From assembly GCA_900088475.1 (NCBI GenBank), contig FLMG01002472.1, forward strand, positions 18,979-82,978: a stretch of DNA of 64,000 nt. The letters are read 5' to 3'. Of the stretch, positions 1-63,336 are shown piece by piece; within the stretch, counting starts at the first letter, position 1, and the number at the start of each line of letters is the position of its first letter. The DNA is from Hyphochytrium catenoides. Its lineage: Eukaryota; Protista; Hyphochytriomycota. The notes under the pieces are model-generated. The model was not told the DNA's origin. It worked only from the letters and a program-made list of their open reading frames with translations, and did not search any database. A program made the position numbers and the translations under genes.

Positions 1-90
1 GATGCGAATCCAGAGACCTGATTGGGGGCGTTGAGGGCAGATGTGAGCTAGATGCGGTTTTGGCTTATAAAAGCCTGTCTATACATATAC

Positions 91-5820: not shown

Positions 5821-5830
5821 GCCACCATGG
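5821..5830 (+). promoter_or_regulatory. Strong translation-initiation context GCCACCATGG for the giant gene
   Basis: Exact Kozak-type consensus around ATG 5827, followed directly by a signal-peptide-like MVRVQYLYTSLLTQCLLVWAVSNA. Confidence 0.6.
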
Positions 5831-14800: not shown

Positions 14801-17800
14801 GTGTCTTCCGAGATAGTACTTTGCCGGTCCCCCCCATCGTCATATCCGAGTACCATCTGGTTATCTTATGCTCCTGATGGTCTTGTCTTTACCGTTGCGG
14901 AAATGTCATTTCGCTACGAGAACGGCCCTATAGTCCATGAGAGTTACCCTCTAAAGGGCTCTGAACTGGGTGGAACGCTCGTTCGCTTCAGGGGAGAGAA
15001 CTTTTGCGCTGGCCCTTACTCTTGTCTTTATACTGGTTCAGCTGGACCGGTAGCTACGACCGCCAAAGCTTTACAACCAGGACTGCTTGCGTGCAAGTCA
15101 CCACCCTACAGACCTGGGAGAACGTTACTCTCCTTAGTCTCTAAATCGTGTCCTTCCGAAAAGCTGACTTTCGAATATTGGTACCACGAAGCGGTGACAC
15201 TGCGCCATTTAACACCAGCGAGCGGAAATTTGCGAGGTGGCTCTACTGTAAGAATTTACGGCAACAACTTTATCAACAGCTCCTCTATGACCTGCAAATT
15301 CGGCGCAAAGAGGTCCCCAGCAACGTTTTTATCAGCCTCCCAGCTTAGCTGTAAATCTCCGAGCAATGAGGTCGGCGAGGTGCATGTGACGATTAGCGTC
15401 AACGGGTTTGACTACACAAGCGAGCACCTTCTTTTTACCTATGTCAGAGGACTTGAGGTGGTCCAAGTGGAGCCAGCCAGTGCACCCGTGAGTGGGAGCA
15501 CCCGGATACTAGTTCAAGGTACGGTGAGACGAGGTGTCCGAACACTTGTATATTTTATGAGTATTAATTAATGAAACAAGCCCCTGATTGACTTTCACGT
15601 GCAGCGAACTTCTTGCAGGAAACCTACAACGTGACTTGCCGCTGGAGTCATCATGTGGATGCTGTAAGGGGAGTGCGTGAAGCTGAAGGCCTTATCTCCT
15701 GCCTCGCTCCTCCTTCTCCTCGAGCACAGATCGTAAGGCTCGAACTACACGCGGAGGACACATCACTGCCTACGTTTGGCATCCGCTTCCAGTACTTCGA
15801 CCCACCTCTTGTGCAGAGGATTATGCCTTCTTCTGGTAGTGAAATCGGGGGGCCTCCTCTAAGGATCTTCGGAGAAGGGTTTTTCTCATCCTCACTCATG
15901 CTCTGCCGTTTCGGAGAAGAAGAAAGGGACATAACATCTGCTCGCTGGATCTCGTCAACGGAGGTGCACTGTCAACCACCCGTCCGCCAACCGGGAGAGC
16001 TATCGCTATACCTTGCCATGAATGGGGTTGACTTTCTTTCGACTGGTCTCACCTACACTGTGCTACAGAAGTTGGAAGTATTATCGTTGAAGCCCTCCAG
16101 AGGCCCCTTGTCGGGCGGCACAATTGTCCATCTACAAGTCAACATAGTTGTAGCAGCAGGGTGCATCCCTACGTGCAAGTTTGGTGACGTTCCGGTTACA
16201 GGCCGATCGGTTCAAGGCCACGTGATATGCATTGTTCCCCCTTTTTCGGGGTCGTTGTCAGGCCAAGGACGCGAGGATGTTAGCGTTATTCAGGTGCCTG
16301 TTCGGCTCAGCCTGGACGGAGGACCCTTCACCCCCAGCGGTCAGGGTTTTGAATACTACGAGCCCCTCTTGGTTTTCGACTACTCACCCAAATCAGGCTC
16401 GATACGGAAGGGCATCTGGGTAACTCTCATAGGCTATGGGTTTCTACCTAGCCAATTACTTGCTTGCTCATATGGCGGTGTTCTGGTCCCTACACTTTAT
16501 CTGAATCATTCAGCTGTGCAGTGCTATGTGCAAAGCAATTCCTCTACCTTGATGGATGTGGCCGTTAGCAACAACGGCCAAGATTTTGCGGTAGCCGGAG
16601 TCCTTGTAGAGAGGCAAATTCCAACAGTTGGATCGGTATCTCCGCAGTCTGGCTCCATTAGCGGTGGAGGGTACATTATAGTCAGAGGAAGCGGTTTCTT
16701 AGATTCTCGACAACTTAACTGCCGCTTCGGCTTTTTCTCCTCTCCCACCGTCCAGTTCGTTTCTGGGTCCGTACTCAAGTGCCAGGTCCCCGCTGTTGTC
16801 TCTGCTGGCCAAATGGTAGTACAAGTCAGCAACAATGGGTTGGATTTCTCAGAATGGGGCCCGAAGTTTTATTTCTTTGAAGATCCTGTTATTGACAGAA
16901 TAGCTCCTTCCTCTGGACCAGACACTGGAGGAGTGCCGGTATCTGTTTATGGCAGGGGATTCTCTGTGTTTGGTGGACTCTACTGCTTGTTTGGGGATAA
17001 AATGGTCATAGCTACATTCCGCTCAGAGGAAGAAGTTATTTGCAGAAGCCCCTCAGCCATCGAAGCAGCTGGCGAAGGTAGACAATCTCCGTGGTCAGGG
17101 GTGAGTTCTAAGGCGATAACAGTTCGCGTCGTAAACCATATGGGAGAGGGTGGCAACAGCAGTCTCCTTTTCACCTACTTCCAGACTCCTAGAGTGCAAA
17201 GAGTTAGCCCCTCTTACGCCTTTGCTGGCCTTGAAGTCACTTTCGAGCTCCATCTTGACACTCAATACCTGCAACTGGAAGCCTGGGATTGTGTTTTCCT
17301 AGGAGAGAATGTTAATGTGGATCAGACAGAGCGCGCCACACTCTTCGGTCGAAACGGAGTGTCCTATTGCCGTTATACGCCACGCAGCTTGGGATACTAT
17401 CGTGTTGGTCTACTGCAAAAGGAAAGTGGGGCGCTCATCACCGGTAAGGCTAAAAATAAGATGTTTGTCAACTCCCTATTCTTATCCGGTGGGCCCACTG
17501 AGTTGATATTTGTGATGCAGGCCCATATGTGTCGGTGCTCCTGACACCCAAAATCCGCAGTGTGTTCCCAACTGCAATTCCTGTGTCTAGCACGGGAGAG
17601 CTTCATGTTAGCGTAGAGAATCTCGCGACCGATAATTGGTACTGCAATCTGGGCGTCGAGCGGTCGAGAGCCCGATGGCTTGCTCAGGATGTGATTGCAT
17701 GCACATACAATAGTTCGCACTCTCCGGGACTCCTAAGTCTTCAGCTTTCCAACGATCTCTATACCGTCGAACACGAAGGTGGGATAGAAGCCTATCCAGA

Positions 17801-20800
17801 AGAGGTTATCAGTAGCATTCGCCCTCCATCGTGCATCAACAGCGGGAGTTGCAGGGTTACGGTTTCGGGCCATAACTTCAGAAACTCGACGTATCTAAGC
17901 TGCTCCTTTAATGGAAAGCCGGTTCAAGCAAAGTTCCTGTCCACGAGCAAGCTGGAGTGCGTTGCCCCTTACATTGAGGCTGACAGCGAGGGTAAGTTCC
18001 CCAATTTAGTAAGATTCCCGCGACACTGACCTGGGCTTATGCAGGTGCAGTTTCCCTGTTGCTGCGCGTAAGTAACAATGGGGTTGTCTACAGTCAGAGG
18101 TCCGTACCATTGGCTCTATATGGCCAACCGGACGTCACTTCAATCGTTCCGACGAGTGGATTGAATAGCGGTGGGACACGAGTTCAATTGACTGGACACG
18201 CCTTCCCGTCAAGTGCAGTCTGCCTATTCGGGAGGACAGTGGTTGAAGCCACTGTCTTCTCCAGTACCCGGGCCACTTGCATTGCCCCCAAAATGACAGG
18301 CAATACTTCAGTTCACCTATTGCTTACATCTGAAGACTTAGGCTTTGCTGGCTCTGGGCCACTTTTCTCGTATATCGCCAGACCATTAATCTCTAGGTTG
18401 AGCCCCCCGATCGTTGATGAAGATGGCGGGAAAACTGTGACCGTCACGGGGTCCTACCTAGACCACGGCGTTAGTGGATGTCAGTTTGGCAACCTCAAAG
18501 TCACCCCCGTGCAAATCTCCGCTATAGAGGTCAAATGTCGAAGTCCGCCTCTGCCTGTCGGCAAAGTCCGCTTCAGGCTTGTACTCCATGACGCTCATGT
18601 TATAGAGGGTGATGATTTAATTCTGAGTGTGACTCCTGCGGCACAACTGGCCTTTTCGAGACCCAATAGTTCGCCTGTGACAGGAGGAACATATGTGAAC
18701 ATCTTCGGCTCTAACTTTTTTAGCTCTGAGCAGGTTCTCTGCAGGTTTGGATCCTACTTAGTGGCTGCAAAGGTAATCAACGAGAAGCAAATAACGTGCA
18801 AAAGTCCCCCGGCAGAGCATGAGGGTCAAGTGAACCTGACCGTCGCTTTAGATGGAGTGGACTTCCTACCTTCAAACCTTGTATTTTCTTTCACATCTGC
18901 AATCGTTGCTACAGGAATTTATCCATCTCAAGGTTCCCTCCGGGGCGACGCTTCGCTGTATGTGAAGGGTGAAAACTTTCCTGCACGAGCCCTTTACGAA
19001 GGAAGATTCACGTTGCTAAATGAGGTAGTCAGGATAGTCCGCTGCACATTTCTCACCTCCACTGAGGTCAGATGCGACATTCCGTCAGGGCTGCACGAGG
19101 GTGTGGCTGTCTTCCAGCTCTGGGTCGACGGTCAGAGGAAGGGTGACTTTAACTACCAGCTGTACAAGGAGCCCAGGGTATTTGAAGTCTCACCCAAGGA
19201 GATCATGGAAGGAGGGCAGCATTGGATCACTGTTGTGGGTGAAAATTTCATTAAAACGCAGAGCTTAGCTTGCAGACTGGGTGACCTTATGGCAGAACGC
19301 GTAGAACGGGACGACTCTACAAGGGCCAGATGCCTCTTCTCGCTGAAAAAGAGCGGAGTGCTCCCTTTGAGTCTCTCGCTCAACGGCTACGACTTTTTAT
19401 CTTCTGAGGAATCAAGGGAATCAACGGTTCGCGTGATAACGACCCCCACCATTACCCATATTCACCCTTCAAGGGGCCCGCCCTCGGGTGGTACCATCAT
19501 CACGATATATGGCAACAGTCTCTCTCAGGCCGCGAAGGTATATTGCTTTTTTGGATCGTCACTTTCTCTAGCCGTAGTTGTTTCTCATTCGGAGGCCAAC
19601 TGCCGGTTGCCCATGCGCAGCGACGGTACACCCTCTACTCTGCCGGTTGGCTTGGCGATAGAAGACCGAAAGCTCTATGCAGACCACAACTTCAGCTACG
19701 TACCATTGCCAGAAATAGAGTCTATTGAACCATCCGTCGTTACTGTGGGTTCGAGTTCCAAGATAGAATTGAGCGGGAAGAACTTCTTGACGGATCCGAG
19801 TTGCGATATGGTATGCCGATTTGGCTCAACGGTTGTGGAAGCCACTTGCGACGGGCCGACAAAGCTGCTATGTAAGACCCCCGAGTTCACCGAAGAGGGG
19901 GCAGTAGCGCTTGACGTCTCCTATAATTGGAGAGACTGGAGCGTCTCTCGTTTGCTCCTCAGGGTTCTGAATCCACCCTCGATCGTCGATGTGGCTCCTC
20001 TCTTCCTAGACGACGTCGGGGGCACACCAGTCACAATAGTTGGTACTGACTTTGTACCAGGCAAGGTTTTCAGGTGTAAATTTGGAGACACTCTAACCAC
20101 GGTTGCAAGGTGGGTGGATAAAGGGACAATAGTCTGCAAAGCTCCACCTCACAGAGCTGGAGTGGTTTTGCTGTCTGTATCAAATGACGGCATATCCTTT
20201 TCAACGTCGTCCCGGTTAGTGGAGTACCAGACTTCACTTTCAGTATTTAGGTGGAGTTTCCGAGGACCTGAGGACTCAACCATTGCTCTCTATGGAGGTA
20301 TCTTTAGGAAGAGAGATCCTCTTTCTTGCGCATTCCTGGACACCGAACGAGATGGCTCTATGTGGTTTAGTCCTGCTCTTGTTGTCAACACTAGCCTTGT
20401 CCATTGTGATACCCTTGGCCTCCCGCCCGGGAAATACCATCTAGAGCTCACCTTAGATGGTAAGCACTTCACTGGCAACCGCGTCCTTTTTTATGCAGGC
20501 AGTCCACCCACGCTTGAATCCATCTTCCCACGTTGGGGAAGGTCCACGGGTGGCACCGCCGTAACAATTACAGGCCGTGGCTTCAGGGAGTCATCTGAGC
20601 TACGATGTCAGTTTGATGGCAAAGTGCATACCCATGCAGTTTATGTTGACGAGACGCGCATACATTGTCACACTCCGGCCTATGATGTACCTCATACCAG
20701 TCAGATTCTTTTGGTCCGACTAGAAGTCTCCAATTGGGGCAATGTCTACAGCGTTGACGAGAAGACCTTTGGCTTTTACCCAGAACTTACGATAGTCGAT

Positions 20801-23800
20801 TTGGATCCGAAAGCAATAGGGGAGAATGGGGGCACCATTTTCCTATATGGATCAAATTTTCTGCCGTCGGACTACTTGGGTTGCAAAATTGACGAACAGG
20901 AAATGAAAGCCACGTTCATCTCATCTACTCTAATATCCTGTCCGGCACCGTCCCTGGAGCCACGTCAATCAAAGGTGTACGCTACCAACAACGGGGCAGA
21001 TTACGTGGAGAGTCCATACCATCTGGCATACGTTCCCAACAGCGTTTCCTTCGGAATTTTTCCTTGCAGTGGGCCTCTAGAGGGAGGAACAGAGGTGACA
21101 GTGACGGGTCAAAATTTCTTACAAGCAGCCCCGGTGGGGTACCATAGCAAAGTCTTTTGTAGCTTTGGCAAACTCGAGGTGGCAGCTAGCCATGTGTCAG
21201 ACACTGCCATCAATTGTTTCAGCCCATCCTCTCAAATCATTGGTCCGTTACCTTTTTCGGTGATTATGAGATCAACAAGATCAAAGCGGAGAATTGAATT
21301 CTTGGCGCAGAACTTGAGCTTTGCCTACTACCGTCAGCCTTCCCTAAGGGCTGTGGCACCGTCTTCAGGTTAGCATGATGGAAACCTTAGCTAGCTCTAA
21401 CTCTCGTTGCTCTTCTCAGTCTCACTATCGTTTGATGTAGGCAGCTGCTCCGGCGGGTCTCTTATTACACTTCTTGGAGATGATTTCAACCCTGAAGTCA
21501 CCTATTCCGTCCGATTCGCCCTCAATAATGAACAAGTGACGGTGAATGCTACTTACATTTCCAAGGATATATTACAAGTCGTTACCCCTCCAGGCCTGCC
21601 AAACATGGCCGGAAGGCTAGTGGACGTCACGATCAGCGCTAATATGGTAGACTTTGGTCGTGATTCTGCGCTATTCTATTATAATCTTGATAGCCAGATT
21701 CATGCTTTATACCCAAATGAAGTGGATGAGACTGGTGGAGGATTACTCTTGGTCATTGGGAGCAACTTTCGAGAGGTAAGCATGTCGTTTTCTCCTACAA
21801 AACCTGCAGCATGCTAACGTCCATACTTGCCAGTCTTTTCCAAACCTCCTTTCATGTAGGTTTGATGGCCTAACGGTAAAAGAGGCAACATTCCTGAACT
21901 CGACGCATCTTTTATGCCCCTATCCAGCCCATCACCCTGGAAGAGTGATGGTGGAGGTGACGACCAATGGGGTCGACTATTTGGATCAGTCCATAGAGCT
22001 CTTGTACGTTGTTGCCCCTACTATTTTAGACGTACAACCTAGCCTGGGCCCTGCGAATGGAGGCTCAAGAGTCACTATTATCGGAGACAACTTTCGCAGC
22101 GCTTCCCACCACTGCTGCTTTGGTGCCCATAAAGTGCCTTTGGAGTTTATCAATGGAAGCCGTATTGTTTGCACATCTCCGCTCCTGGAGGTTAATGGAG
22201 ACGGTCACGCAGTGCCATTGACAGTGACTTCGAGTCAATGCAAGCTAGATAGTTTGATGGACATGAGACTTGCTCTAACTTCGGAGAGCATTTACCGGCC
22301 ATCATTCTACTTCCATAGTCCGCTTGCTTTAGTTAGCATATCTCCTTCACGCGGCCCCTTGGCAGGGGGGACGGAAGTCTTGGTTACACTGGATCCTATG
22401 CTTGAAATGGGTGGAGTCTACTGCAAATTTGGTGACCTCGTCGTCCAGGGGTCCACTTTAGGCCCTACTCTAGTACAATGCACTTCTCCCGCACAACCCA
22501 ACCTGGGCCTCAGAAATGGAGTGGTCCAAGTGTCATTGAGCTTCAATGGTCAGGACTTCTCCATCTCGACTCTGGGCTACACGTATTACAATTCACCAGA
22601 AGCAGTCAGAGTGAATCCTCGGTTTGGGACAACTGACAAGGAAACCACGGTTTTAATTATTGGTTCAGGCTTTACTTCGGCATTCCCTTCTGCTTGTCGC
22701 TTTGGGTTTTCCGAAGCTACCGCAGCTGAAGTGCTCTCTTCCACGGAGCTGAGGTGCACTACACCTCCACATCCGGTAGCTGAACTTGTTACTATATTCT
22801 ACTCTTTGAATATGGTAGACTTCTTTGACCTAGGTGTAACCTTCGAGTACACTTTCAGACCAATAACATACCAGATCCGGCCGACGTTTGGCTCTCTAAG
22901 CGGTAATACCCTGTTGACCGTGGTTGGTAGCAACTTTGCCGAGGCTGCCGAGTTGTGGTGCATTATTGGAGGGATGCCTGTTCCTGCAACTCCCATATCG
23001 ACTGAGGAGGTTACTTGTCGAACCCCATCATGGGACAAGTTAGAACTGGAAAAACTGGAGGTGTCCCCTCCTTTGGAAGCAGCAGTATACGTTATGGAAA
23101 GCCCCACACCAGGTTTCTTGGAGAATTATTCCGGAAAACGAAACCTACCCGATAGCTATGTCTTGTTTCAATATGTGGCCGAATTAGAGATTGTCTCAAT
23201 CTTTCCCCGCTCCGGCTATACTCGTGGTGGTACTAGAGTTGACATCCGAGTTCAAAACCTGCAGAACTCCTCAGCAACGGGATGCCGTTTTGGAGGAATT
23301 AGGGTGCCAGCTACCCTCATCAGTTCTGGAGAACTGTCGTGTCTAGCTCCCGCCGTAAACCAAACGGGCGTCGTACCTCTGGAAGTAACCACGAACGGGG
23401 TGGACTTCTCTACCGCAGTTCAGTTTGATTATCGCCTGGAGCCCAATATTTACAAAACCACGCCCGGTAGAGGAGGATGGAAAGGTGGTTCTCAAGTGAC
23501 AATAACTGGGTCCAATTTCTATCCAGACAGCAAAATCACTTGCATGTTCGGAAGTCAGGTTGTTAGAGGGTCATACGTTGACAATGAGAATGTATTGTGC
23601 CTGACACCACCAGGGGAGGCAAGGAATGAAATCCAAAGAATATCTCTATTTGCATCGCCCGCCTGGGATCCGGAAGTGCAGAGAGTGACGGTTAAGGGGG
23701 CGAGTCATGCCGAGGAGGTCCAGGTGATATCTACCTCCGCGTGGGGAGATGTGCAAGAGGTGCAAGAGCTGAGCATAGCACTGCCAATCAATAATCCGGA

Positions 23801-26800
23801 GATTCAAGTCATAAGTACAAGACTGACTCATCGACTTGAAGTACAAGAGGTAAGCTTGGATGGAACCGCTTTTGTAGCTGAGGAGCAACGGCTTTCAATC
23901 GTTTGGGAGAAAGGAGCCGACGTCAGTGGCATTGTAAAATTGACCTACAATGACCAAAAAACCGATGGGCTTCTGTGGGACGCACTGTCTTCTGAGCTGA
24001 TCGAGGAGGCGCTGTCAAAGCTGAGGGGCATGAACAGGCCAAAAGTCAGAGTTGAAGACACACCGATGTCTAAAGACCTGATCGTAACGTTTACGGGTAC
24101 CATGGGTGATCTGAATGATCTTCAGCTTGATATCTCGCAGTTGAGCGGCAGAGGTCTTCAATGGCAGAGCATTGAAGTCGTTAAGGGAATACCAGCAGCG
24201 ATACAGTCAGTTATCCTCCAGACAACTAACGCCACATCCGTGACAGGCTCCTTTTGGTTGGGCTTTCAGGATGCGAAGAGCGACCCTATCCACCCGCGCT
24301 CATCTGCCCTCGAATTTGCCGCCGCCCTCCGCCCACTTTTCTCCGTCGTAGGGCAGCTAAATGTTTCCGGTCCGGTGAGGAACACGTATGGCGGCTGGAC
24401 TTGGGAGGTGTCTTTCGTCCAGAGAGGAGGTCCTCTTAACCTTTTGAGGCCTAATTCGTCTCTCTTGTCAGGTGGGGGCTATGACGGTGTATCGATAGAG
24501 GTCAGAGAAAAAGTAGCTGGGACTAGCGCTCAAGTAAGTGGCTCCTTTGCTATTGTCGCGCACAATGGCAAGCGCAGTGGCCAAATCTCCGTTAAGGCCA
24601 ATCCTGCTGACCTTGAGAGCGCTCTTGGCGCACTGGAGCTGGGTCCCATCAAGGTGACGGAAGGACCACAGGGCTGGAATGGCGGCAAAGCGTGGCGATT
24701 AACCTTTCAGGCACCAGGGAGTGTACCGGCACTGACAGTTGATACTTCAAATGTTATGGGAACAGTTCCACAGTGGAATGTGCTCAGGCAAAGTAAGGGA
24801 ACGGACCCTGTTGTGCATGAAGTCACATTTAGTTGTCCGAACAGTGCGACCATCTCGGGCCCCATATACTTTGTATATAATGGGGAGGAGACAGCAACGG
24901 TTTCATTAGCTACATTATCAGAGATGCAGCTAACTACACTTTTAGCTGCCTTGCCATCAATTGGTTCAGGTGGTGTGAGTGTTTCAGCTGAGCTGTCATC
25001 GTTACATAGCCAAAGTTATGAAGTTACGCTAAAACAACCCCCATTTCTGGATCCCAAGACTATACCCGAACTCATGGTGGGCAATCCTGCAGCTGTGACT
25101 TGTGGAGGAATCGTGGGCGTCGCACAGTCAGTTGTGAAGCTAATTGGCAACCCCTTGCAGCCTCTGACTGGTGAAGTTCAAATATCCTTTGGATCTGAGA
25201 GAGTCAATGTCCCTTACGACTCTTCCTCAACCGAAATGGCCTCAATTCTCTCCGTAATTCCCGCTGTCGGTAAGGTTAGAGTGTCACGGACGGCCGTTGA
25301 CGTTAACCTTAAGACTTTCGCATGGTCTGTTACATTCATTGAAAGAGCTGGAGCTCTTCCCCTCTTCGCAGTAGACGACTCGCTTTTGCAGACAAATGGT
25401 GTGGCGGCAGTTACCGCTGACCGAGTTACTAGCAGCGGTGATCGTTGCTGCCTGACGGGGACCTTTACTCTTTCCTATGGTGGCCATACAAGACTCCTTC
25501 CTGGTACAGCAGCTGCGACAACCGGAGCGACGGCGGTAGTTACGTCGGAGGATTTGAGGTCCTTCATTGCCGCCGGCGATGATGTATCCATTGGCGGTAC
25601 TGTGTACTCCGTCGACACGAGTGGGCTTTTTTCCGCGACTTCTCTGCCCCTTAACATGACCTACGTGGGTCCTACGCGGACTGGGATTGAAATTTATACT
25701 CAGTTTAGAACCGCGGCATTAAATGTTGGGTCGTCGGCTAGCCAGATTTCAGCGGCGCTGGACGGCCTTCCGCAACTTGGGGATCAGATCAACGTCTCGC
25801 AAATAAGCGCATCTCCGAACGGTTTGATGGCGTGGAGAGTAACGTTCCGAAGCCCAGGACCTCGATCTCTCATTCGAATGAACGCTGAGCAGGTGAGCAT
25901 TACGGATGGCACTGCTCTGGCAGCTATCGGAGGTGTCAGGAGGATACAGTCTGGAAGCTTAGGGCCAGTTCAACGTGTCTTCCTTACGGCACCAAGCCTC
26001 ATTATGTCCGGTAGCTTCCGCTTATCTTACAAAACATGGCTCTCGCCGTTTCTACCTTTTGATGCTCCATCCTCACTCGTCAAAGAAACATTGGAAGACT
26101 CAGGACTCTTTGCATCAGTAACGGTCATAAGGACTAGGGCGGATGAGCACCCTGACATACCTGGCATAGGGTATGTATGGACAGTAACTTTTCATTCTAT
26201 CGCTACTAATCTCAACCCCATTGAAGTGATTCCTAACGTGGAGACGCAGTTTCATGGCACCGCAGCGTATGGGCAAGGGTTGCCTTTCACTGCGGCAACT
26301 GGGAGTACTCTCTCAGGTTTATTCTGGCTGGTCTACGACGGTCTCGTAACGCTGCCACTCTCGTATGACGCTTCGGCCGAGGATGTTGAAAATGCCCTTA
26401 ATCAGATTCGAAGCGTACCGCGCGTGACTGTCAGTCGCGAGGGACCTGATCTAAATCAGGGCTATACCTGGACTGTAACCTTCAAGGACAGGCCTCTACC
26501 ATTGAAGGAAGTCTCTACCACCTTTGTGGAACGACGACAACTTGTGGCTCATCATGACCTTTCAGGCACATCGCCCGCAATATCCGTCAGGAAGGTTGTA
26601 GCTGGTTCAAGGCCCTCAGGTTACTTTCGCCTGGCATTCGCGGGTGCTCTGACTCGAGCCATCCCTTATAATGCCACGGCAGAAACGGTAAAGTTAGCAC
26701 TCGAGGAGATTCCCTCATTGGCTCTACACCGGGTAACAGCAGAAGACAGGACTGAATTAGCATACTCTTGGCTTGTAACGTTTGCGAACGCGGATGATAT

Positions 26801-29800
26801 CGGCCTTTTATCTGTGGGGGAAAGTCATCTGGGCGCAACGAGCTCAGAAGTGATGGTTGAGCAGGTCAGTGATGGGACTGTTGCGTTGGGCGGAAAGTTC
26901 TCAATAGAATATGAAGGCTATGCGACAACCCTCCTTCCGGTCAATAGTGGTCCTGGTGCCGTGGAAGAAGCCTTCACTTCATTAGCCTCAGTTGGTAAGG
27001 TCAAAGTCACGCTTTCTCAGCAGTCCGACAAGAGAGTCGCTTGGGACATTGAGTTTTTGACCCTGGGCAATCCCGAGAACCTTGGTCTCCTGCCACTTGT
27101 AACACTACATACACACTTGGTGTACGGTACTGAGGTTCAAGGTGAGGTAAGAAGAATACAGGACCCCTGCTGCACTTTACGTGTCTCTACCAATGGAGTA
27201 GACTACAGTAGCGACCAATCGTTCTTTCAGTATGAGGAAGGACCAATGGCACTGGAGGTTTTACCTTCATATGGTTCGACTCAGGGTGGTACTCTTGTCA
27301 AGGTTAGGGGGAGAAACCTTGCTGATCATGGCATCCACTATTGCCTTTTCGGAGATGCGCCAGAGGTGCTTGCAGAGTGGCTGGATAGCACTTTCTTAGC
27401 TTGCACCACCCCCTCGCATGCTGAAGGGCTGGTGGAAGTCAAACTCAGTCGGTGGCCCTCCCTCGATGGCGCGAGTCCTATCATCGGAAATTCCATTGCT
27501 TCTTATCGCTTTCTGCCAGATATTGAAATCCTCGACATATTCCCCAAAAAAGGGAAGCCATCGGGGGGCACCAGGCTTACTATCTCTGGAATAGGCTTTC
27601 TCGAAGATCCTCTCCTTGCCTGCAGATTCCGCTCAACTCCAGATGTATCGATCCAGAAAGCTAAGGAGGTTAAAGTATCTGCACAGTTCATAAACACCAC
27701 CCACATTACCTGTGACACACCAGGCATTGGATCCTTTTTCAGCAACACCAATGAGTCCTGGGAAGGTCGTGTGTCAGGCTTAAGCCATGTCGAGGTGACC
27801 GCGAACGGCATCGACTATTCTATCAACAGTGCCACTTTCTGGTATATTCCTCTGCTGGCTATAGATGCCATCTATCCGATACGAGGTCCATTATCTGGTT
27901 CTACACCTGTGGTGGTGACGGGTGCCAGATTTAGCAGCCCTACTTACTGCCACTTTGGTGAAGCATCACCATACGAAGCTGAGTACGTTTCGGATAGGTC
28001 CGTCATCTGCTCCAGCCCCTCTCACGAGGTCCAAAGCTCTATACAGCAAGTATCAGCCACCTGGGATACTCTCGTCTCCGAGATCCAAAAGATTTCTCTG
28101 AAGAGTACGACGCCGATTGCCACGCTACCTGGTTACTTCACTCTCTCACTAGGTACCTATATCTCCGATCCTCTACTCCCAACTTCGCCAGCCACGGGTG
28201 CAGGGTCCTTGGGAGAAACCTTGCAAAAATTGCCCCAGGGATTCGGCGTTACAGTAGACAGGATTATATCTACCGATGGACTAGAAGTTCAGTGGACAGT
28301 CACCTTTCCCGATGCCTACGGGGATGTTCCTCCAATTAGGGCAGATCCATCACACTTGGACGGAAAGGCCGTTCAGATGTGGGTGGAGACCTTAAGGGAG
28401 GGTGATATGGGGAGCATCAAGTCAGAAGTGCAGGTGATTAGTACCGTGCAGCCGTACCAATCCAACCAAGTGGACATAATAGTCCAAAACAACCTTGTCC
28501 CAACTCTAGAGGTTGGGAGACTGACTCTGGCAGCAGATGACAGGGTCTCCGGAGAGTTTTTTCTTCTGTACAATGGAGCTGTTTCTCCAGCATTACCCTG
28601 GAATGTGTCTGCCGCCGCCCTCTCTTCGACCATTTATACCCTGACGGGCCTGGAGGTTGTGGTTTCAAGGCTGAGCCACGCCTCCCGTGGCTTCATATGG
28701 AATGTGACGGTTCAGCGTTTTGCTTCCATTCTATCAGAACTAAGCGTCAGCTCTCACAACCTGGTTTGTACCACGGGGTGCGCGATTACGCTTCGCTTGA
28801 CATTGATACAAGGCCTCGTGCCGGAGGTGGACGGTTACTTCACAGTCAGCCATGGTGGTAGACACACCCAGGATATTCCATATGATGTTTCTTCCCTAGA
28901 CCTTCAGAAAGAGTTGCAGGCAATATTACCTGTAGAAGTGGTAGTCAGCTCGGCGTTGCCTGGTAATTCTTCCAGAATCTGGAGAATTACTTACATCGCC
29001 CCAGGAACCTACGACATCGATGTCATGTGGGTCAACCGAACGCAAGCTGCAGCAACAATTGAGCGATATGTGGTTAAGGACGGATCTACTCAAGCCGAGG
29101 GCGAATTCCGAATTGGCTTAGGAACTCTTTGGTCTTCATGGCTGCCCTTTGACGCCTCTGCGGAGAGAGTCAGACAGGCGTTACACTTGGATCTCGGGGC
29201 ATCTGGCCTTACTTCGAATATCGTCGTTGAAAGATTGACACTTTCAGCTGGAGCTGATATCGTGGATTATGAGTGGACCATTCTGTTTGATCCCCAAGGA
29301 GGTGACGTACCCTCTTTGGTACTTGACAAATCACGACTAAACGGCGAGTCTGTGGATATGACAGTGACCACCGTAGTCAATGGGAACTTCGTTCCCCGAT
29401 CAGGATCTTTTGCTCTTTCGTTCGAGGGGATGACAACATCAACACTGCCATACAATGCAGATAGTCGTACTCTTAGCCTAGCATTGGGAAGCCTTGCCAC
29501 CATTTCTGATTTGTCCGTGGCGCAGGAAATTACACCTAGTGGCATCACATGGCAAGTTACCTTCAGAAGCAGCAATCGGCAGCGGCCGTTAGGCCGACTG
29601 CCAATGCTGCAAGCGAACGCTGTGGATTTGCAGGGAAACGGGGCTACTCTCGATGTGTACGAAGTTTTGCCTGGCTATGGTCCAAGCGTCGCTGTCGGCG
29701 TTTCGGCGAATAAGAAAGACATCGTCTTTTCAAGCGTAAACTTCGAATATCATGAAGCTTTGGATGTCCAGTCATTTTCTCCAACAGTGGGAGGGGAACG

Positions 29801-32800
29801 GGGAGGTACGGAGGTTATAGCTAGTGTGGATGCATCGCCCGGTGTCATGTTTCCGGAAGCGGGTGTCTTCGCATTTCAAGCTTCAGATCTGGGGGTACGA
29901 TGCCGCTTTGGTGATGAAGTGGTGGGGGGAAAGGTAGTATCGGCTAGGACGGTCTCCTGTACCTCACCCCCTCATGTTCCCGCAACCGTTATATTTGGTG
30001 TTTCTTTGAATGGAATAGATTTTTACCACTGTCTACAGCGCTACACCTTTCTCAAGGAAATGGATAATTTCCTGCTTGTTCCAGTACGGGGGCCATTGGA
30101 GGGCGGCAACACTTTGACTGTTTACGGAGCATTCGCTGAAGCGACTGCGGCACTTGGGGAGGAAGGAAGTAACAGCAACGGCACCTTTAGCTGCCGCTTC
30201 GACGGACAAGATAAAGCGCAGGTTGCTAGTGTCGTTGCCACGGACTTCATTACGTGCGTCGCACCACCTTCAACTTCTCCTGGACCCGTGGCGGTTCAGG
30301 TCCTTCTGAACTCTCAGGAGGTTACTCTTGCATCAACACAATACTACTACGAACCGAATTGGTATGTGACAGAAGTAGTTCCCTCATCTGGACCTGCTAG
30401 AGGTGGAACGATAGTGTCAATCCGGGGTGGACGATTCCGAGACTACAACTCAGATCTTCTGTGTCGGTTCGGATCCAAGGTGGCCAAGGCGCGCTGGATA
30501 TCAGAAAACGAGCTAAGCTGCGAAACTCCATCTCAGAGCCCCGTTGATGAAGTTCAGGTACTGGATATAACACCAACGACTTCGCAGGGTATCACTGGTA
30601 CCTTCGCCCTGAGTGGGGGTGAAGTTTGTCTCGAGGATTTGGAGGGCATTTATTGTGAGACTCCCAAGACGGCAGCCCTGCCCGCTAACGTTAGTGCTTT
30701 TGTACTGCAACATGAGCTAGAGCTTCTTCAGGTGAATGGACCGGTGAAAGTCTCTGTTGCTTCTCCATCCGTCCCGACTGTTTTCAGATACTTAATCACA
30801 TTCACCGGCGGACTCGGAGCCATCCCCCTACTGCAAATAGCTGAAAATAGCCTTGATCAAGGCACGGCCATGATGAGCCGGTTGGTGTCTGGTAAACGAC
30901 AAGCTGCCATGACTGTGCCTTTGCATATCTCGTTCAATGGGCAAGACTTCGTGGCTGGAGGGTACAACATCAACTTTACCTACCATGATGAAGCCTTGGT
31001 ATCAGAGATAGTGCCTGACAGGGGGCCCTTAACAGGCCATACTGAAGTCTTGGTGCTTGGCGAGAACTTCATCAACCATGCTGGTCTAGCATGCAGCTTT
31101 GGAGAATCTCCGGAGGCTGTTGTTGCTGTATCCCGCTTCATCAACAGTTCCGCGGTCATCTGCATATCTCCCCGGTCTCTTAGGGAACATCCTACAGAAG
31201 TCATCGTCAGGGTTTCGAATAGCTTCAATGGCGCGCTGGAAGGCTTCTCGTCCATTGGTGTTCCTTTCCGCTATGAAGAAGTCCTTTCTGTTAGCGACCT
31301 GGTGCCATTCCAGGGCCCAGTATCGGGCAATTTCTCCGTTAGAGTGCTTGGCAAACACTTTTCTAACTCTTCGAGATTACGTTGTCGCTTCGGCAGCGTA
31401 GTTGTTAAGGGCCTCTGGAAGAGTCATGAAGAGATGCTTTGTATGGCTCCTCCCCACCCGGCCGGGATGTATCCTGTGTCCGTTTCCAACAATGATCAAG
31501 ACTATGCGTCCTCCAAAGCTCCTTTCTACTTCTACCCTGACCCCTCCCTTTCTCGTATAGTTCCGATAGCAGGACCTGCCCTGATTGGTGGCACAGCCGT
31601 GACTGTTCATGGCAGAGGCTTTGTCAATTCGTCCCTTCTCGGTTGCCGCTTTGCCAACGTTACTGTACCGGCAGAGTTCCGCAGCGCGAGTGAGATAGTG
31701 TGTAGGTCTCCCTCTGTCACAACAATCATAAGGAACGTTTCCGAAGTTCTGGGGCGGTACTCTCTTTCCGAGTTCCGAACCCGCCATCCGAACCCAATGA
31801 CTGGCAGTCGCTTGTTGTTTCCTGGATCACAGTACTATCCTACTTACCTGGCCAAGCTTGTCGGCTTAGAGGTGACAAATAATTGGCAAGACTACACAGA
31901 TAATGGTATAACTTACCTATACCAAGCTGATGCCTTGGTGACAGGAATCTTCCCCCGATCGTCCTGGGACAGTGGCAGAATATCTCTCTTCGTTCAGGGC
32001 AGAAATTTCGTGAACTCAACCCACCTCTCGTGTCGCATCGGGGAACAATTAGTACATGGTTCGTTCCTGAGTGACACCCTTGTCCTTTGCCATGGGCGGT
32101 CACACGCGCTGGAGCGGCCTCAGCAAGGCTTTTACAGTCACCATCTCCCTCAGACGAAGAACCTTCCCCATGCAATGAAGGGCGTTCCAGGTCCAAAGGA
32201 TCCAGCCTCACTTTATGTAGAAATCTCTAACAATGGTGTTGATTTTACTTCTAGTCGCACGGTTTTCGAGAGCCTTGGGCCCTGTCCAACTGGTTCCTAT
32301 TGCCCTCTTGGCGTTGGGACAGCCAAGTACATCTGTCCACGCGGAGCCTACTGCCCTGGCTCTCAAAACGCGAACTTCACCCTCTGTCCTGCCGGCACTT
32401 ACCAACCATCCTATGGTCAAAATGACTGCCTCCGTTGTCCTATCGGGTACATTTGTCCTGAGTTAGGCATGCATGTGCCTAGAATTTGTCCCGCGGGCTT
32501 CGTTTGTGATGTTAGCGGGTTAGTTAGCGCAGAACAACCATGCCCTGAAGGACATTTTTGTCTAGAAGGAACAGCGACAACTGTGACTACATGCGGGCAT
32601 CCCAGGCCGTCTAGCAGGCTATTCCCGACACTATCACACGCTGAACTCCCGACAACGTTCCGGAGGAATCGTCGACCAGAGGGCTCAAGGCTTGTGCTCG
32701 GTGCTAGAAATGCAGGCTGCTGGAGTAATAGCACTTCTGACTTTGGGCTCCAGGTTAGCGATGAGCCTGCCCGGTTTTGGATGGAGAGGCATCTGATGCC

Positions 32801-35800
32801 CTTAGCAGCAGATTCCCCTTTTAAGCCGTTTCGAGGTCGGTACTGCCTGGATGATAGCTGTATGCTGCTAGATGATCTGGAAAATCTGGCTGTCGCAGAC
32901 TATGCCTTCGATTACTCCTCCACGGCTTTTGCTATGCGCAGGCCCGTTCCGTGCCCAGCAGGAACTTATTGTCACCCAGGCACCGCCAGCGAACTCACTA
33001 CAATGCGAAACCTAAGCTCCCCTCAGCCTTGTATCGAAAGCATGTACTGCCCGACTGGTACCACTAGTCCGCATGGAGTAGGTGATTGTCCGCGGGGATT
33101 TTATTGCCCGTTTGGTGAGAAGTTACCATGCCCCGCAGGAACCTACTGTCCACGCTCAGGACTGTTCGATCCGCTTCCATGCGCGCCTGGAACCTTTAAT
33201 GCTATGGTCGGGCAAGAAAGTTGTACACTGTGCCCTGCTGGATACATATGCCCTGGTTTCGGTCGCCTGCAACCCACAATTTGTCCAAATGGATACGTTT
33301 GCAGCAAAGAGACTCTAGCCTCGCCAAATATTCGGTGCCCCAAGGGATTTTTCTGCCCCAACGGCACCATTACGTCTGATCCATTCCGCAACGATACTAC
33401 TCTAAGACCTTACCCCTGCGCGCCAGGAAGTTTCTGCATGGGTGGTGTTGGGTACGACGAGGTCCGACCTGGTGATTTCCTGTATGCCCAGCCGTGTAAG
33501 CCAGGCTTCTACTGTGAGCTCGCATCGGTATCTCCTCAAGGTTCAGGTCTTTGTCCCAAAGGATTTTACTGTCCGGAAGGGACGGCGGTACCTATCCCTA
33601 CGCCTAAGGGCAAGTATGCTGCCACAGAGGGAACTGTACGACCAGCAGACTGCTTGCCAGGTTACTACGCGCCAACTATAGAGACTGTACTTTGCTACCC
33701 ATGCCCCCCTGGAACCGAGTGCGAAAGCGACGGGATGAGTGAGGCTGTGGTCTGCCCCCCTGGTACATATAGAGGCTCTCTGGAGGACGATGGTATCACT
33801 TGTCTTCCATGCCCTAAGGGTACATGGTCTAAGAATTGGGAACTCCGAGATATTTCTGAGTGCACGCCTTGCCCAACAGGAACAGTCTGTCCAACCGATG
33901 GTATTATGGCGCCTTGCAGTATGGCAGATCTTCCCACGCCTTACGAGCCTGTGACTGGAAAGATGCTAAATCAGGAGGACTGTCTCAAGTTGGGAAGTAA
34001 CTACTTCTTTGGGGTCCTCTTAGAGCCATGGATTGATAACAAGGGTAGAGGGCCACACTTCCGGTCATGGAGAAATGGCACCTGCTTTTACAACAGACAG
34101 AAGGACGGCTCTGTGGTGTACCAACGGTTCAGAGATTACTTTGGGCCCATGTTCGATATAGTAAGGGGCGTGCCGCATCAAGGATATGGAGACGCTGGGC
34201 AAGTAACCCCACCTCACTTTTTCGGTCGGGGGTCCTTGTACATCAATCTGGACAACTCGCGTAAGTTCAACCAGACCTTTAACTGTACTCCTGGATTTTT
34301 CCAGTGGAACGATATTTTGCAAGGAGACCAGTGGTATCCAGGAACTTGTGAAGCAGATATTTTTTGCTACTCTTCGGAACCTTCAAGGGTAAAGCCTTGT
34401 CAGGAAGGGTTTGTCTGTGATGAGCGGACGGGCTTCGTGGAACAGTTCCGCAGCCCTTGCAAAGAAGGTTATGTATGCGACTTTGGAACAACACCAGATA
34501 CCTCATTACTAGCTCCTCAAGGGCAGTACAAACGGCTATGCCAAGAGGGGTATTATTGTTTAGATGAGTCAGGACCAAGTACTTTCAAGAACTTTCCTTG
34601 CCCGACAGACTACTTTTGCCCGACAGGTACCGCCCGACCAATGATTGGTTTGATGGCGAACGATGCTTTGAATCGGCAGCTAGACACACAATCAGCAGAT
34701 CCTTTCTTCAATGTTGTTCACCAAGTGGGGCTCTCCATTGATGACCACAAACTCATTTCCGACCACGATTTCCGTTGTCTGAAAGGTGCTAGCCAGGAGC
34801 TGCAGCAAAACTACATCTATCAAAGGGATCCCGTCAATGGCAAAACCAACTGGACTACCGTGGCGATTATGAATGACCTTTACTGCGGCAGGGACCACAA
34901 ATGGAGACACGTGGCGAACGCTATTCACCGCAAAGTTTGCAACTGCACGCAGCAGATGCAGGTTATCCAGCGTATCTTTGAGTTTTGGAAGTGTACCACC
35001 AACCTCTCTAAACAATTTGATGACATTGGCTATGCATCTTTTGAGGCTGTAGGTGGTGGCTATGACGTCTGGCACCCTCGAAGGAAGCTGCTGTCTGCTA
35101 ATCAATGCCGCTATTACTCTCAAAATGGCGGGCTACGGGACTATCGGGCTGAATTAGAATCCGGTGGTGTGAGCTTTCGATGGGCTTGGGCAAACACAAG
35201 CCGCTTTGGATCCTACGAGAACCTGAAGCAGTTGGTGACAGAAGAATTTGATCGACAGGAATTAGAGTTGGCCTTCCAGCAAAGATGGGAAGTAGATCCA
35301 TTTCTTTACGATATCTGGGCTGGGCTGCGCCTCATCAATCAATACGGCGACAATGTGCCCGAGCTTATCAAGCTCAATTTGACTACAATGGAACCCCTCC
35401 GTCTGGATGTCTGCGAGTGCCAACACCTTCTTCGGTGTCCAAATGGGACCTCCTCGACTGCCTACAGCAAAAGTGTGTTCGATTGCGGGGGCTTGAAGGA
35501 CCCAGTTGTCATCAGAAGGTTCATGCCAATCCCTCTTACAAACGGTAGACTTGATAATGGAACGGACTTCAAAATGCTGACTGGCTCAACCGGCACTGCT
35601 GGACTTGGTCAAGTGGAGTTGCAAACTATGGAGGTAGCCATACTTTCACTGAACTTTACTAGTATGTCCACGAACCTTACGTATGGGCAACATTATGAGA
35701 TCTCTGCTTATGTGGGTTGCAAGCCCTGCCCACCGCAATACATGTGCCGGTATGACCTAACAGAGCCGTATTGTCTTTCCCCCTCTGAGGATGATCAGAG

Positions 35801-58815: not shown

Positions 58816-58864
<49 letters not shown>

Positions 58865-63269: not shown

Positions 63270-63294
63270 CAAGCAGAGAGAGAGAGAGCGAGCG

Positions 63295-63336
<42 letters not shown>

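What the first reader, a model, noticed from the sequence alone, without database searches (positions are those of the whole stretch)
23625..27170. Nested out-and-back arm: six orphan EVQ strands matched by six strand-less domain bodies
Seen: the insert opens with seven consecutive short strands (NEIQRISL, PEVQRVTV, EEVQVIST, QEVQELSI, PEIQVIST, LEVQEVSL, AEEQRLSI; 23625-23900), and only the seventh is followed by a body. Of the ten bodies, four have their own strand (EEQ, AIQ, VHE, PVQ) and six lack one (VSGSF, LTGEV, LTGTF, LSGLF, PSGYF, LGGKF). Inference: the chain runs out as a string of single beta-strands and returns, each body capturing one strand. This intramolecular strand complementation would build a two-chain rod of nested domains, with the complete units as tip and side knobs. 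Standard domain annotation would not see this topology.
Basis: partly seen in the sequence, partly recalled or inferred. Interest (0 to 1): 0.92.

Follow-up and report, generated by a model that had tools for sequence, protein, structure and literature searches.

The report
Russian-doll nested domains in surface protein
Inside one loop of a giant secreted protein of a stramenopile-like protist, ten copies of a roughly 100-residue domain (related to a decoration domain of mycobacteriophages) appear to be inserted into one another up to seven deep, so the chain first lays down a row of single strands and only later adds the matching domain bodies in reverse order.

Summary

- **In the sequence:** window 23625-27170 lies inside one IPT/TIG domain of a roughly 10,000-aa gene. 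It holds seven E-V/I-Q strands ("S"), 13-15 aa apart, then ten homologous ~90-aa bodies ("B"). Four bodies have their own S. Six follow the previous body after only 2-5 aa.
- **Bracket reading:** with S as an open bracket and B as a close bracket, the insert balances 10/10. Two further inserts in the same ORF also balance (5/5 and 1/1).
- **Structure prediction:** AlphaFold2 models (pLDDT 79 and 85) make every S a beta-strand. Single-domain structural hits span model ranges 1..1178, 15..1081, 30..993, 57..606 and 70..390. These are five of the six bracket pairs.
- **Relatives:** about 190 relatives keep the grammar, with orphan S and orphan B counts correlated at r=0.82. Couplings learned from adjacent S-B pairs favour bracket pairing (z=5.5) over parallel pairing (z=-1.2).
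- **The unit:** it is absent from Pfam but homologous to the CTE-like domains of mycobacteriophage Bxb1 (profile E=3e-45). By profile coordinates, Bxb1 gp23 (PDB 9d93) carries three such domains nested, split at another site.
- **Verdict:** this is recursive self-insertion of a domain, a known principle (six levels in cyanobacterial RNA polymerase), here with a new split site and greater depth. The rod geometry and the function are untested.
the scan had already noted this same stretch (s1-367403).

The parts
5797..36731 (+). One giant gene (context). It has a signal-peptide-like start, about 80 IPT/TIG domains in ORF pieces separated by short interruptions, three nested inserts and a Cys-rich tail. 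The last piece, 21780-36731, is an open frame of 4984 codons.
   Evidence: ORF pieces and translations; Pfam TIG 1e-139, 15 stretches
23442..23624 (+). N-terminal part of the host IPT/TIG domain of insert A
   Evidence: by analogy with insert B, whose host IPT is rebuilt from both ends in the model
23625..23858 (+). Six orphan first strands S1-S6 (x-E-V/I-Q-x-I/V-S/T-x), 13-15 aa apart
   Evidence: DSSP strands E3-10, 18-24, 32-39, 45-52, 60-68 and 72-80 in the model
23877..24521 (+). Two complete innermost units, S7+B1 and S8+B2 (the tip of the nest, depth 7)
   Evidence: structural hits with model ranges 82..189 and 190..299
24534..24800 (+). Body B3, closed by S6
   Evidence: 4-aa gap to B2; hits spanning 70..390
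24810..25148 (+). Complete side unit S9+B4
   Evidence: E396-403 is the strand
25164..25439 (+). Body B5, closed by S5
   Evidence: hits spanning 57..606 and 55..606
25452..25955 (+). Body B6, assigned to S4 by bracket logic only. It carries a ~75-aa beta-barrel inserted after its first hairpin (about 25482-25706).
   Evidence: barrel hits 620..694 to the phage Chi tail tip 8vjh_B (Z 6.9), JBD30 and LepA. No structural row spans 44..777.
25962..26303 (+). Complete side unit S10+B7
   Evidence: hits 777..893
26310..27167 (+). Bodies B8, B9 and B10, closed by S3, S2 and S1 in that order
   Evidence: hits spanning 30..993 (Z 11.4, rmsd 2.3, 86 aa, Bxb1 capsid CTE), 15..1081 and 1..1178
27168..27245 (+). 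C-terminal part of the host IPT/TIG domain of insert A
27849..29759 (+). Insert B with its host IPT: S (S B) S S (S B) B B B, five units
   Evidence: AF2 pLDDT 84.6; IPT hits of 87 aa at rmsd 1.6 spanning 1..637; 220..321 = S5+B2; 203..415 = S4 to B3
30357..30992 (+). Insert C with its host IPT: a single S+B unit

Best explanation
The region is a recursively nested array of one domain family. The unit is a ~105-residue alpha/beta domain: an N-terminal strand S (E-V-Q-x-I), a G-x-F-x-L hairpin, a helix, and four more strands including W-x-V-T-F. Its two ends lie side by side, so a whole unit can sit in a loop of another domain. Here, units have been inserted again and again into the loop between S and the rest of a host unit of the same family. 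The outermost unit sits in a loop of an IPT/TIG domain. The chain therefore runs out as S1 to S6, forms complete units at the tip (S7B1, S8B2), and returns. B3 closes S6, B5 closes S5, B6 closes S4, B8 closes S3, B9 closes S2 and B10 closes S1. Complete units S9B4 and S10B7 are side branches. That gives seven levels of the same domain inside an IPT. Shown here: the sequence grammar, its conservation in orthologs and in the wider family, S-body covariation in favour of nested pairing, and the nested topology in two AlphaFold2 models. Inferred: successive levels are tied by two short linkers (5-6 aa going out, 2-5 aa coming back), which would give a stiff, branched side-arm on the IPT rod of a secreted or surface protein. 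Also inferred: folding must proceed from the inside outward, with S1 waiting about 1,100 residues for its body. By analogy with the homologous phage decoration domains, the arm may display binding surfaces, possibly for glycans. Its function was not tested.
For: - **Sequence anatomy:** seven S motifs and ten bodies, with 2-5 aa gaps before six of the bodies.
- **Balance within the ORF:** all three inserts balance (10/10, 5/5, 1/1) and each interrupts an IPT.
- **Orthologs:** relatives at 22-30% identity (Aphanomyces P0152, Pythium P0002, and P0018, P0004, P0006) keep the body order (SB)(SB)B(SB)BB(SB)BBB.
- **P0001:** residues 5357-6830 read SSSSSS BB SSSSS BBBBBB SS BBBBB, which is 13/13 and returns exactly to zero.
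- **Family counts:** orphan S and orphan B per protein correlate at r=0.82 over 183 proteins (P0001 has 36/36). Balanced segments are almost all well-formed bracket words (n=4: 33 of 35 against 7 expected; n=6: 14 of 14 against 2 expected).
- **Covariation in adjacent pairs:** mutual information in 1205 adjacent S-B pairs gives an antiparallel ladder between S and the WxVTF strand.
- **Covariation in orphan pairs:** those couplings, applied to 184 orphan pairs, score bracket pairing at z=+5.5 against within-segment permutations and parallel pairing at z=-1.2.
- **AF2 of insert A:** pLDDT 79.4, and all S are DSSP strands. Domain hits span 1..1178, 15..1081, 30..993, 57..606 and 70..390.
- **AF2 of insert B:** pLDDT 84.6. 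The host IPT is rebuilt from residues at both ends (87 aa, rmsd 1.6, range 1..637), and 203..415 corresponds to S4 to B3.
- **Solved relative:** Bxb1 gp23 (PDB 9d93) matches the unit profile as N-part, N-part, unit, C-part, C-part. That order indicates three nested units.
Against: - **Predicted only:** all three-dimensional evidence comes from models built on shallow alignments (21-22 rows). No coordinates or PAE could be inspected, so pairing is read indirectly from the first and last aligned residues of structural hits.
- **Unconfirmed level:** the S4/B6 level has no supporting structural row.
- **Non-fitting row:** one weak row (70..507, Z 5.3) does not fit a bracket pair.
- **Orientation uncertain:** pTM is low (0.39-0.49), so the relative orientation of the domains, and hence the 'rod', is unknown.
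- **Count shortfall:** family-wide, detected orphan S (1175) fall short of orphan B (1692). I attribute this to degenerate S motifs (3 of 16 are missed in this ORF) and to a second split site seen in P0003, but I did not prove it.
- **Covariation caveats:** the 34 segments include many orthologs, so they are not independent. Absolute scores for bracket pairs are only near zero.
Confidence: 0.85

Rival explanations
1. Ordinary beads on a string. The bodies are self-sufficient domains in tandem. The E-V-Q run is a separate element (a linker, a small sheet of its own, or disordered), and the own strands are optional N-terminal extensions.
For: B-B junctions of 2-4 aa are the commonest junction in the family. 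Detected orphan bodies outnumber detected orphan strands, 1692 to 1175.
Against: Counts balance exactly in all three inserts here and in P0001. Orphan S and B counts correlate at r=0.82. The S strand covaries with the WxVTF strand of the body, and the bracket pairing is preferred. The models place each S in the bracket-matched body. The solved phage relatives include the S-equivalent strand in the domain.
Confidence: 0.05
2. Strand exchange between molecules. The orphan strands of one chain fill the orphan bodies of another, as in donor-strand complementation of pili or domain swapping, giving dimers or polymers.
For: Strand-deficient bodies and free strands are what such systems need. A monomer prediction cannot exclude swapping. 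Weak profile matches to OCM5 and OCM6 (PDB 9ufe) hint that the domain may occur in those proteins.
Against: Each insert is balanced within itself and begins and ends at adjacent points of one IPT domain. This is what nesting in cis requires and what exchange in trans does not. The monomer models satisfy every strand with good confidence. By profile coordinates, Bxb1 gp23 is nested within one chain.
Confidence: 0.05
3. Artefact. The S run or some bodies are not part of the mature protein (an unrecognised intron or a pseudogene), or AlphaFold2 forces a nest that the protein does not adopt.
For: This is a eukaryotic gene with several interruptions upstream. No RNA evidence was obtained: the listed runs that hold the stretch look like DNA (kind guessed, 'DNA?') and no RNA-specific search was made. 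The alignments were shallow.
Against: The frame is open for 4984 codons across all three inserts. Orthologs predicted from other genomes and from a transcriptome (MMETSP, P0007) keep S runs and bodies in one frame. S-S spacing peaks sharply at 13-14 aa across the family. The sequence-only tests agree with the models.
Confidence: 0.03

Closest known systems
CTE and CTE-like domains of mycobacteriophage Bxb1: major capsid protein C-terminal extension (PDB 9d9w/9d9x), tail tube gp19, and tail-tip cage/distal tail protein gp23 (PDB 9d93)
   Same: The domain family is the same by sequence and by fold. The unit profile scores E=3.1e-45 against gp23, 1.2e-6 against the capsid protein and 7.7e-4 against gp19. 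Z is 10-14 with rmsd 2.3 A over 86-106 residues. The phage copies also begin with an E-V-Q strand followed by G-G-T-F-x-L. gp23 residues 269-609 read as N-part, N-part, unit, C-part, C-part, which indicates three units nested in one chain. This block is itself an insertion relative to D29 gp27, according to the GenBank note. A single eukaryotic unit finds cluster-A phage minor tail proteins by tblastn at 30-35% identity.
   Different: In gp23 the host unit is split at about profile positions 56-62, so roughly half a domain lies on each side. Here the split is right after the first strand, leaving bare 8-residue strands. The phage nest is 3 deep; here it is 7, and by motif runs up to 14 in relatives. 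The hosts also differ: a virion protein of an actinobacterial phage against a giant secreted eukaryotic protein.
Recursive domain insertion in the SI3 region of cyanobacterial RNA polymerase beta' (sandwich-barrel hybrid motifs)
   Same: One domain type is inserted into itself repeatedly, giving A1-B1-C-B2-A2 hierarchies with branch points. A survey of 2.7 million classified domains reports it as a six-level nested architecture (PMC13114784).
   Different: The fold is unrelated and the setting is a cytoplasmic enzyme. Here there are seven levels of one family plus the IPT host, relatives are predicted to go deeper, and the arrangement is the rule across a large family rather than one lineage-specific elaboration.
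Out-and-back domain organisation of flagellin, FliD and phage sheath or tail proteins
   Same: The chain leaves a core, builds outer domains and returns, so outer domains are insertions in inner ones. FliD D2-D3 (6kty, 5fhy, 5xlk), Geovibrio flagellin (9au6) and the A-1(L) sheath (8kee) are among the structural matches to single units.
   Different: In my recollection these have two to four levels made of different domains. No sequence relationship was found here.
Donor-strand complementation in chaperone-usher pili
   Same: A fold that lacks one strand is completed by a strand encoded elsewhere.
   Different: There the strand comes from another subunit and drives polymerisation, and the fold is Ig-like. 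Here the strand and body are in the same chain, in balanced numbers, and the fold is alpha/beta.

Membership tests
Bxb1-type CTE / CTE-like domain (actinophage capsid, tail-tube and tail-tip decoration domain) | Significant sequence-profile similarity to the solved phage domains | tested here: met
   The profile of 72 eukaryotic units against PDB sequences gives gp23 E=3.1e-45 (5 stretches), major capsid protein 1.2e-6 and tail tube gp19 7.7e-4. tblastn of one unit finds 11 phage records at E down to 1e-7.
Bxb1-type CTE / CTE-like domain (actinophage capsid, tail-tube and tail-tip decoration domain) | Same fold as the solved domain | tested here: met
   Predicted units against 9d9w_Aa residues 307-396: Z 10.4-11.4, rmsd 2.3 A, 84-86 residues. 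Against 9d93_M: Z 12.3-13.9. Against Patience 8giu_1: Z 9.2-10.3. These are predicted models, not experiment.
Bxb1-type CTE / CTE-like domain (actinophage capsid, tail-tube and tail-tip decoration domain) | Role as a surface decoration or binding module of a virion | not testable with these tools
   The host here is a eukaryotic secreted protein. A binding function is inferred by analogy only. The Bxb1 structure paper could not be read.
Recursive (nested) domain insertion, A1-B1-C-B2-A2 | A domain formed from two sequence segments that flank one or more complete domains | tested here: met
   Single-domain alignments of 68-106 residues span 1..1178, 15..1081, 30..993, 57..606 and 70..390 in the model of insert A, and 203..415 and 1..637 in insert B. 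S4/B6 has no supporting row.
Recursive (nested) domain insertion, A1-B1-C-B2-A2 | Open and close elements balanced and well nested in sequence, conserved in relatives | tested here: met
   10/10, 5/5 and 1/1 in this ORF. Ortholog architecture is kept. Covariation prefers the nested pairing.
Recursive (nested) domain insertion, A1-B1-C-B2-A2 | Confirmed by an experimental structure of this protein | not testable with these tools
   Only the phage relative gp23 (9d93) is solved. Its nesting was read from profile coordinates, not from its coordinates.
IPT/TIG domain (host of the inserts) | Pfam TIG match and IPT fold rebuilt from the two flanks | tested here: met
   PF01833 scores 1.1e-139 with 15 stretches in the ORF. 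EBF3, EBF1 and plexin IPT hits give Z 11-13.7, rmsd 1.6-2.1 and 83-87 residues over model range 1..637.
Intermolecular donor-strand complementation (chaperone-usher type) | The missing strand is supplied by another polypeptide | tested here: not met
   Every strand-less body has a strand in the same insert, and the monomer models satisfy all of them. Exchange in trans cannot be formally excluded without experiment.

The most novel reading that the evidence does not exclude
This family would be the deepest and most regular case of recursive self-insertion of a protein domain yet seen. There are seven levels here and up to about 14 in relatives, written as a bracket grammar of bare first strands and strand-less bodies. 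The result is a set of branched, tree-like side-arms on giant stramenopile surface proteins, which would have to fold from the inside out. The unit is shared with mycobacteriophage virion decoration domains, which raises the question of an ancient common origin or a transfer between actinophages (or their hosts) and eukaryotes. Because these proteins exceed the length limits of the public AlphaFold database as I recall them (not checked here), the architecture may have escaped the large surveys of domain insertion.
Probability: 0.55. Interest if true: 0.8.

Novelty: new variant of a known kind. Interest (0 to 1): 0.72.

Why it matters
- **A new extreme for nesting:** a survey of 2.7 million classified domains reports six levels of nested insertion as its most complex case (PMC13114784). 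A family in which seven or more levels of the same domain are the rule would set a new extreme.
- **Simple rules:** the family would give nesting easily stated rules. There is one preferred split site after the first strand, a 13-14 residue strand period and 2-5 residue return linkers.
- **Branching from a linear chain:** it would show how a linear chain can build branched arms.
- **A folding question:** the first strand would have to stay unpaired until a body made about 1,100 residues later arrives.
- **An annotation gap:** an abundant domain of diatoms, oomycetes and other stramenopiles has no Pfam model, and the strand runs look like low-information linkers to standard tools.
- **A functional lead:** the sequence-level link to the Bxb1 capsid, tail-tube and tail-tip domains gives these giant proteins their first structural anchor and a testable lead on function, namely surface binding.

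Tried and rejected
- **Pfam on the insert** (E<=10) found nothing. The Pfam families listed for relatives (FN3, PA14, Filamin, Ig_GEX2_N and others) do not cover the unit.
- **PHROGs** gave only weak hits: major tail protein 7e-4 and tail sheath 3e-3 for one relative's unit.
- **Direct run lengths** (an S run followed by a B run) are not diagonal, because nests carry side branches. I dropped that as a test in favour of a stack parse.
- **Cutting at gaps over 70 aa** splits many nests and inflates the apparent imbalance.
- **Literature searches** for nested, Russian-doll or matryoshka domains in IPT or stramenopile proteins found no description of this family.
- **The Bxb1 structure paper** is not held, and no paper for PDB 9ufe (OCM5/OCM6) was found.
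- **The organism** could not be named, because the run labels are coded.

Full report
**1. What is in the sequence**

The finding lies in the last and largest open piece (21780-36731, 4984 codons without a stop) of a + strand gene. The gene starts near 5800 with a signal-peptide-like segment and consists mostly of IPT/TIG domains (Pfam TIG 1.1e-139, 15 stretches). A Cys-rich tail follows and matches Ephrin_rec_like weakly. LTR and copia notes nearby, the short interruptions between ORF pieces and the homologs all point to a eukaryote. The best named relatives are oomycete, pelagophyte, brown-algal and diatom proteins.

Ten bodies follow. Aligned with six more bodies from further down the ORF, they form one clear ~90-residue family: G-x-F-x-L, then T-x-x-L-x-x-x-A-S, a helix, V-x-V, W-x-V-T-F, G-D-x-P-x-L and a last strand ending in G. 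An HMM of the body finds exactly these 16 in the ORF and no others. The gaps before the six "strand-less" bodies are 2-5 residues. The gaps before bodies with their own strand are 16-17 residues.

The insert interrupts an IPT domain. The sequence just before it is the C-x-T-P-P strand of an IPT, and just after it comes the S-x-N-G-x-D-x-S strand.

**2. The bracket grammar**

Write S for a strand and B for a body.

- Insert A reads S S S S S S (S B)(S B) B (S B) B B (S B) B B B. That is ten of each, and the count returns to zero only at the end.
- The same ORF holds S (S B) S S (S B) B B B at about 28035-29675.
- It also holds S B at 30546-30893.
- Each of these also sits inside an IPT domain.

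**3. Relatives**

An exhaustive HMMER search with the insert gave 952 proteins at E<=1e-3, most of them thousands of residues long.

- **Orthologs:** at 22-30% identity (P0152 Aphanomyces stellatus, P0002 Pythium insidiosum, and P0018, P0004, P0006) they keep the body order (SB)(SB)B(SB)BB(SB)BBB and a run of E-V/I-Q strands in front, inside an IPT.
- **P0001:** residues 5357-6830 read SSSSSS BB SSSSS BBBBBB SS BBBBB. The depth goes 6, 4, 9, 3, 5, 0, so 13 strands and 13 bodies are balanced.
- **Motif detection:** across about 190 proteins a matrix for S finds about 1450 sites at 9 bits, against 51 in the reversed sequences. The body HMM finds about 2950 bodies.
- **Counts per protein:** strands without an adjacent body and bodies without an adjacent strand correlate at r=0.82 (Spearman 0.75, p=1e-34). 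P0001 has 36 and 36.
- **Order within segments:** among gap-delimited segments with equal counts, nearly all are well-formed bracket words. For n=2 it is 154 of 159 against 53 expected for random order, for n=4 it is 33 of 35 against 7, and for n=6 it is 14 of 14 against 2.
- **Spacing:** S-S spacing peaks sharply at 13-14 residues. S runs reach 8 in many oomycete proteins, 9 in P0007 and 14 in P0001.
- **Shortfall:** detected orphan S (1175) are fewer than orphan B (1692). Part of this is motif degeneracy, since 3 of 16 S in this ORF fall under my threshold. Part is a second split site seen in P0003, where the opening element is S plus the first hairpin and the closing element starts at the helix.

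**4. Covariation**

In 1205 adjacent S-B pairs, corrected mutual information is highest between S positions +7, +6, +4, +2, 0 and body columns 54, 53, 55, 57, 57-59. This is an antiparallel ladder between S and the W-x-V-T-F strand.

I took log-odds tables from these adjacent pairs only. I then scored the 184 orphan pairs of 34 well-formed nested segments.

- The bracket (last-in, first-out) pairing totals -102.
- Random re-pairings within the same segments average -301 (sd 36), so bracket pairing stands at z=+5.5.
- The parallel (first-in, first-out) pairing totals -346, at z=-1.2.

The segments include many orthologs, so the z-score overstates independence. The direction is nevertheless consistent.

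**5. Predicted structures**

*Insert B with its host IPT* (637 aa, 21-row alignment A1) gave mean pLDDT 84.6, with all five S as DSSP strands. No coordinates are returned, so I read topology from structural alignments.

- IPT/TIG structures (EBF3, EBF1, CAMTA1, MET, plexins) align 83-87 residues at rmsd 1.6-2.1 A (Z 11-13.7) over model range 1..637. The host IPT is therefore rebuilt from the two ends.
- Hits of 85-100 residues span 203..415, which is the start of S4 to the end of B3, skipping the unit in between.

*Insert A* (1182 aa, 22-row alignment A2) gave mean pLDDT 79.4, with all ten S as strands. The table compares the expected span of each bracket pair with the spans of single-domain hits.

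| Pair | Expected span | Observed spans |
|---|---|---|
| S1+B10 | 1..1181 | 1..1178 |
| S2+B9 | 16..1084 | 15..1081, 16..1081, 15..1083, 14..1086 |
| S3+B8 | 30..994 | 30..993 (Z 11.4, rmsd 2.3, 86 residues), 29..995 (Z 13.9), 28..993 |
| S4+B6 | 44..777 | none |
| S5+B5 | 58..605 | 57..606, 55..606 |
| S6+B3 | 71..392 | 72..389, 70..388, 70..390 |
| S7+B1 | 85..188 | 82..189, 84..190 |
| S8+B2 | 190..299 | 190..299 |
| S10+B7 | 779..893 | 777..893 |

Five of the six distant pairs thus appear with matching start and end. S4+B6 has no row. One weak row (70..507, Z 5.3) fits no pair. A ~75-residue beta-barrel inserted in B6 (620..694) matches small barrels of phage tail-tip proteins and LepA. 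pTM is low (0.39-0.49), so the mutual orientation of the domains is not established, and neither is the "rod".

**6. What the unit is**

Pfam has no model for it. The ESM Atlas lists 66 unnamed clusters, mostly from diatoms and oomycetes.

A profile of 72 complete units (A3) matches three Bxb1 proteins: "Tail tip cage, gp23" at E=3.1e-45, the major capsid protein at 1.2e-6 and the tail tube gp19 at 7.7e-4. It also matches Patience gp22 at 0.03, and OCM5 and OCM6 of PDB 9ufe at about 0.02. A single unit finds cluster-A phage minor tail proteins by tblastn at 30-35% identity. A later paper calls the extra domains of the Bxb1 distal tail protein "CTE-like domains" (PMC13252515).

The gp23 match is itself nested. 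The profile positions run as follows.

- Positions 2-56 match residues 269-324.
- Positions 1-60 match residues 329-387.
- Positions 2-76 match residues 390-463.
- Positions 39-104 match residues 499-565.
- Positions 64-104 match residues 565-608.

This reads as two N-parts, a unit whose matched part reaches profile position 76, and two C-parts. Each of the three begins with an E-V-Q strand.

The GenBank note says that D29 gp27 matches gp23 residues 9-265 and 614-685 only. That is consistent with the block 266-613 being an insert. So a solved phage protein of the same family appears to carry a three-level nest, but split at about profile positions 56-62. The protist proteins split right after the first strand.

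**7. How it most likely works**

This is recursive insertion of a domain into its own kind. The ends of the unit are adjacent, which it needs in order to sit in an IPT loop. The loop after its first strand tolerates a guest.

The bracket word defines a tree. The trunk runs D1 to D6. There are two tip units inside D6, side unit S9B4 inside D5 and side unit S10B7 inside D3. A foreign barrel sits inside B6.

Neighbouring levels are joined twice, by a 5-6 residue linker going out and a 2-5 residue linker coming back. This should make the arm stiffer than a singly linked chain, and it keeps the arm out of the line of the IPT rod. Folding has to run from the tip outward.

All of this paragraph beyond the tree itself is inference. 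So is a binding role by analogy with the phage domains.

**8. Comparison and novelty**

Nested insertion is a known principle. A 2026 survey of 2.7 million classified domains reports six-level recursive nesting in cyanobacterial RNA polymerase as its most complex case (PMC13114784). Flagellin and FliD are out-and-back, and Bxb1 gp23 nests this very domain three deep by profile coordinates.

Four things are new here: the split site, which leaves bare strands; the depth (7 here, and up to 14 by motif runs in relatives); the regularity across a large eukaryotic family; and the link to the phage domains.

I found no paper describing any of this. I rate it a new variant of a known kind. The scan had already noted the same stretch from another window (s1-367403).

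Noticed in passing
window 25482-25706 (inside body B6): A ~75-residue beta-barrel is inserted after the first hairpin of B6. It matches small barrels in the phage Chi tail tip (8vjh_B, Z 6.9), the JBD30 baseplate, the phi92 endosialidase and LepA/EF4. Relatives (P0001, P0007) carry many similar inserts at the same site, so the family has a second guest type and a second insertion site.
   Followed up: partly
P0003 residues ~690-1100 (metagenome relative): A variant grammar. The opening element is the strand plus the first hairpin (about 32 aa), and the closing element starts at the helix. The nest is therefore split before the helix rather than after the first strand.
   Followed up: partly
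L001:10928-12985 (Bxb1 gp23, PDB 9d93 chain M): Residues 269-609 match the eukaryotic unit profile as N-part, N-part, unit, C-part, C-part, which indicates three nested units split at about profile positions 56-62. The GenBank note says D29 gp27 matches only residues 9-265 and 614-685, consistent with the whole block being an insert.
   Followed up: partly
PDB 9ufe chains EA/FA (OCM5, OCM6): The unit profile matches OCM5 (residues 194-305) and OCM6 (232-338) weakly, at E about 0.02. From memory, and not checked here, 'Ocm' names Ochromonas mastigoneme proteins, so the domain may occur in stramenopile flagellar hairs. No paper was found.
   Followed up: no
window 38814-40354, + strand: Two open pieces downstream of the stop at 36734 encode several long hydrophobic stretches that look like transmembrane helices. 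They could be later exons of the same gene (a membrane anchor) or a separate membrane protein.
   Followed up: no
window 47099-47204, 48559-48680, 58816-59302, 63263-63336: Long (AG)n and (CT)n tracts, up to about 490 bases, lie within the stretches of strong purine/pyrimidine skew seen at 42-54 kb and 58-60 kb and may account for part of it.
   Followed up: no
window 5797-21814, + strand: The same gene upstream consists of seven open pieces separated by short interruptions (likely small introns). There is a signal-peptide-like start near 5830 and an N-terminal non-IPT region. Homologs carry a Laminin_G_3 (PF13385) hit there in the precomputed lists.
   Followed up: no
window 32400-36700 (ORF residues ~3500-4900): A Cys-rich region with repeated C-P-x-G-x-Y-C spacing matches Ephrin_rec_like only weakly (E 0.002, below the Pfam cut-off). 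A long Cys-containing tail without any family hit follows it.
   Followed up: no
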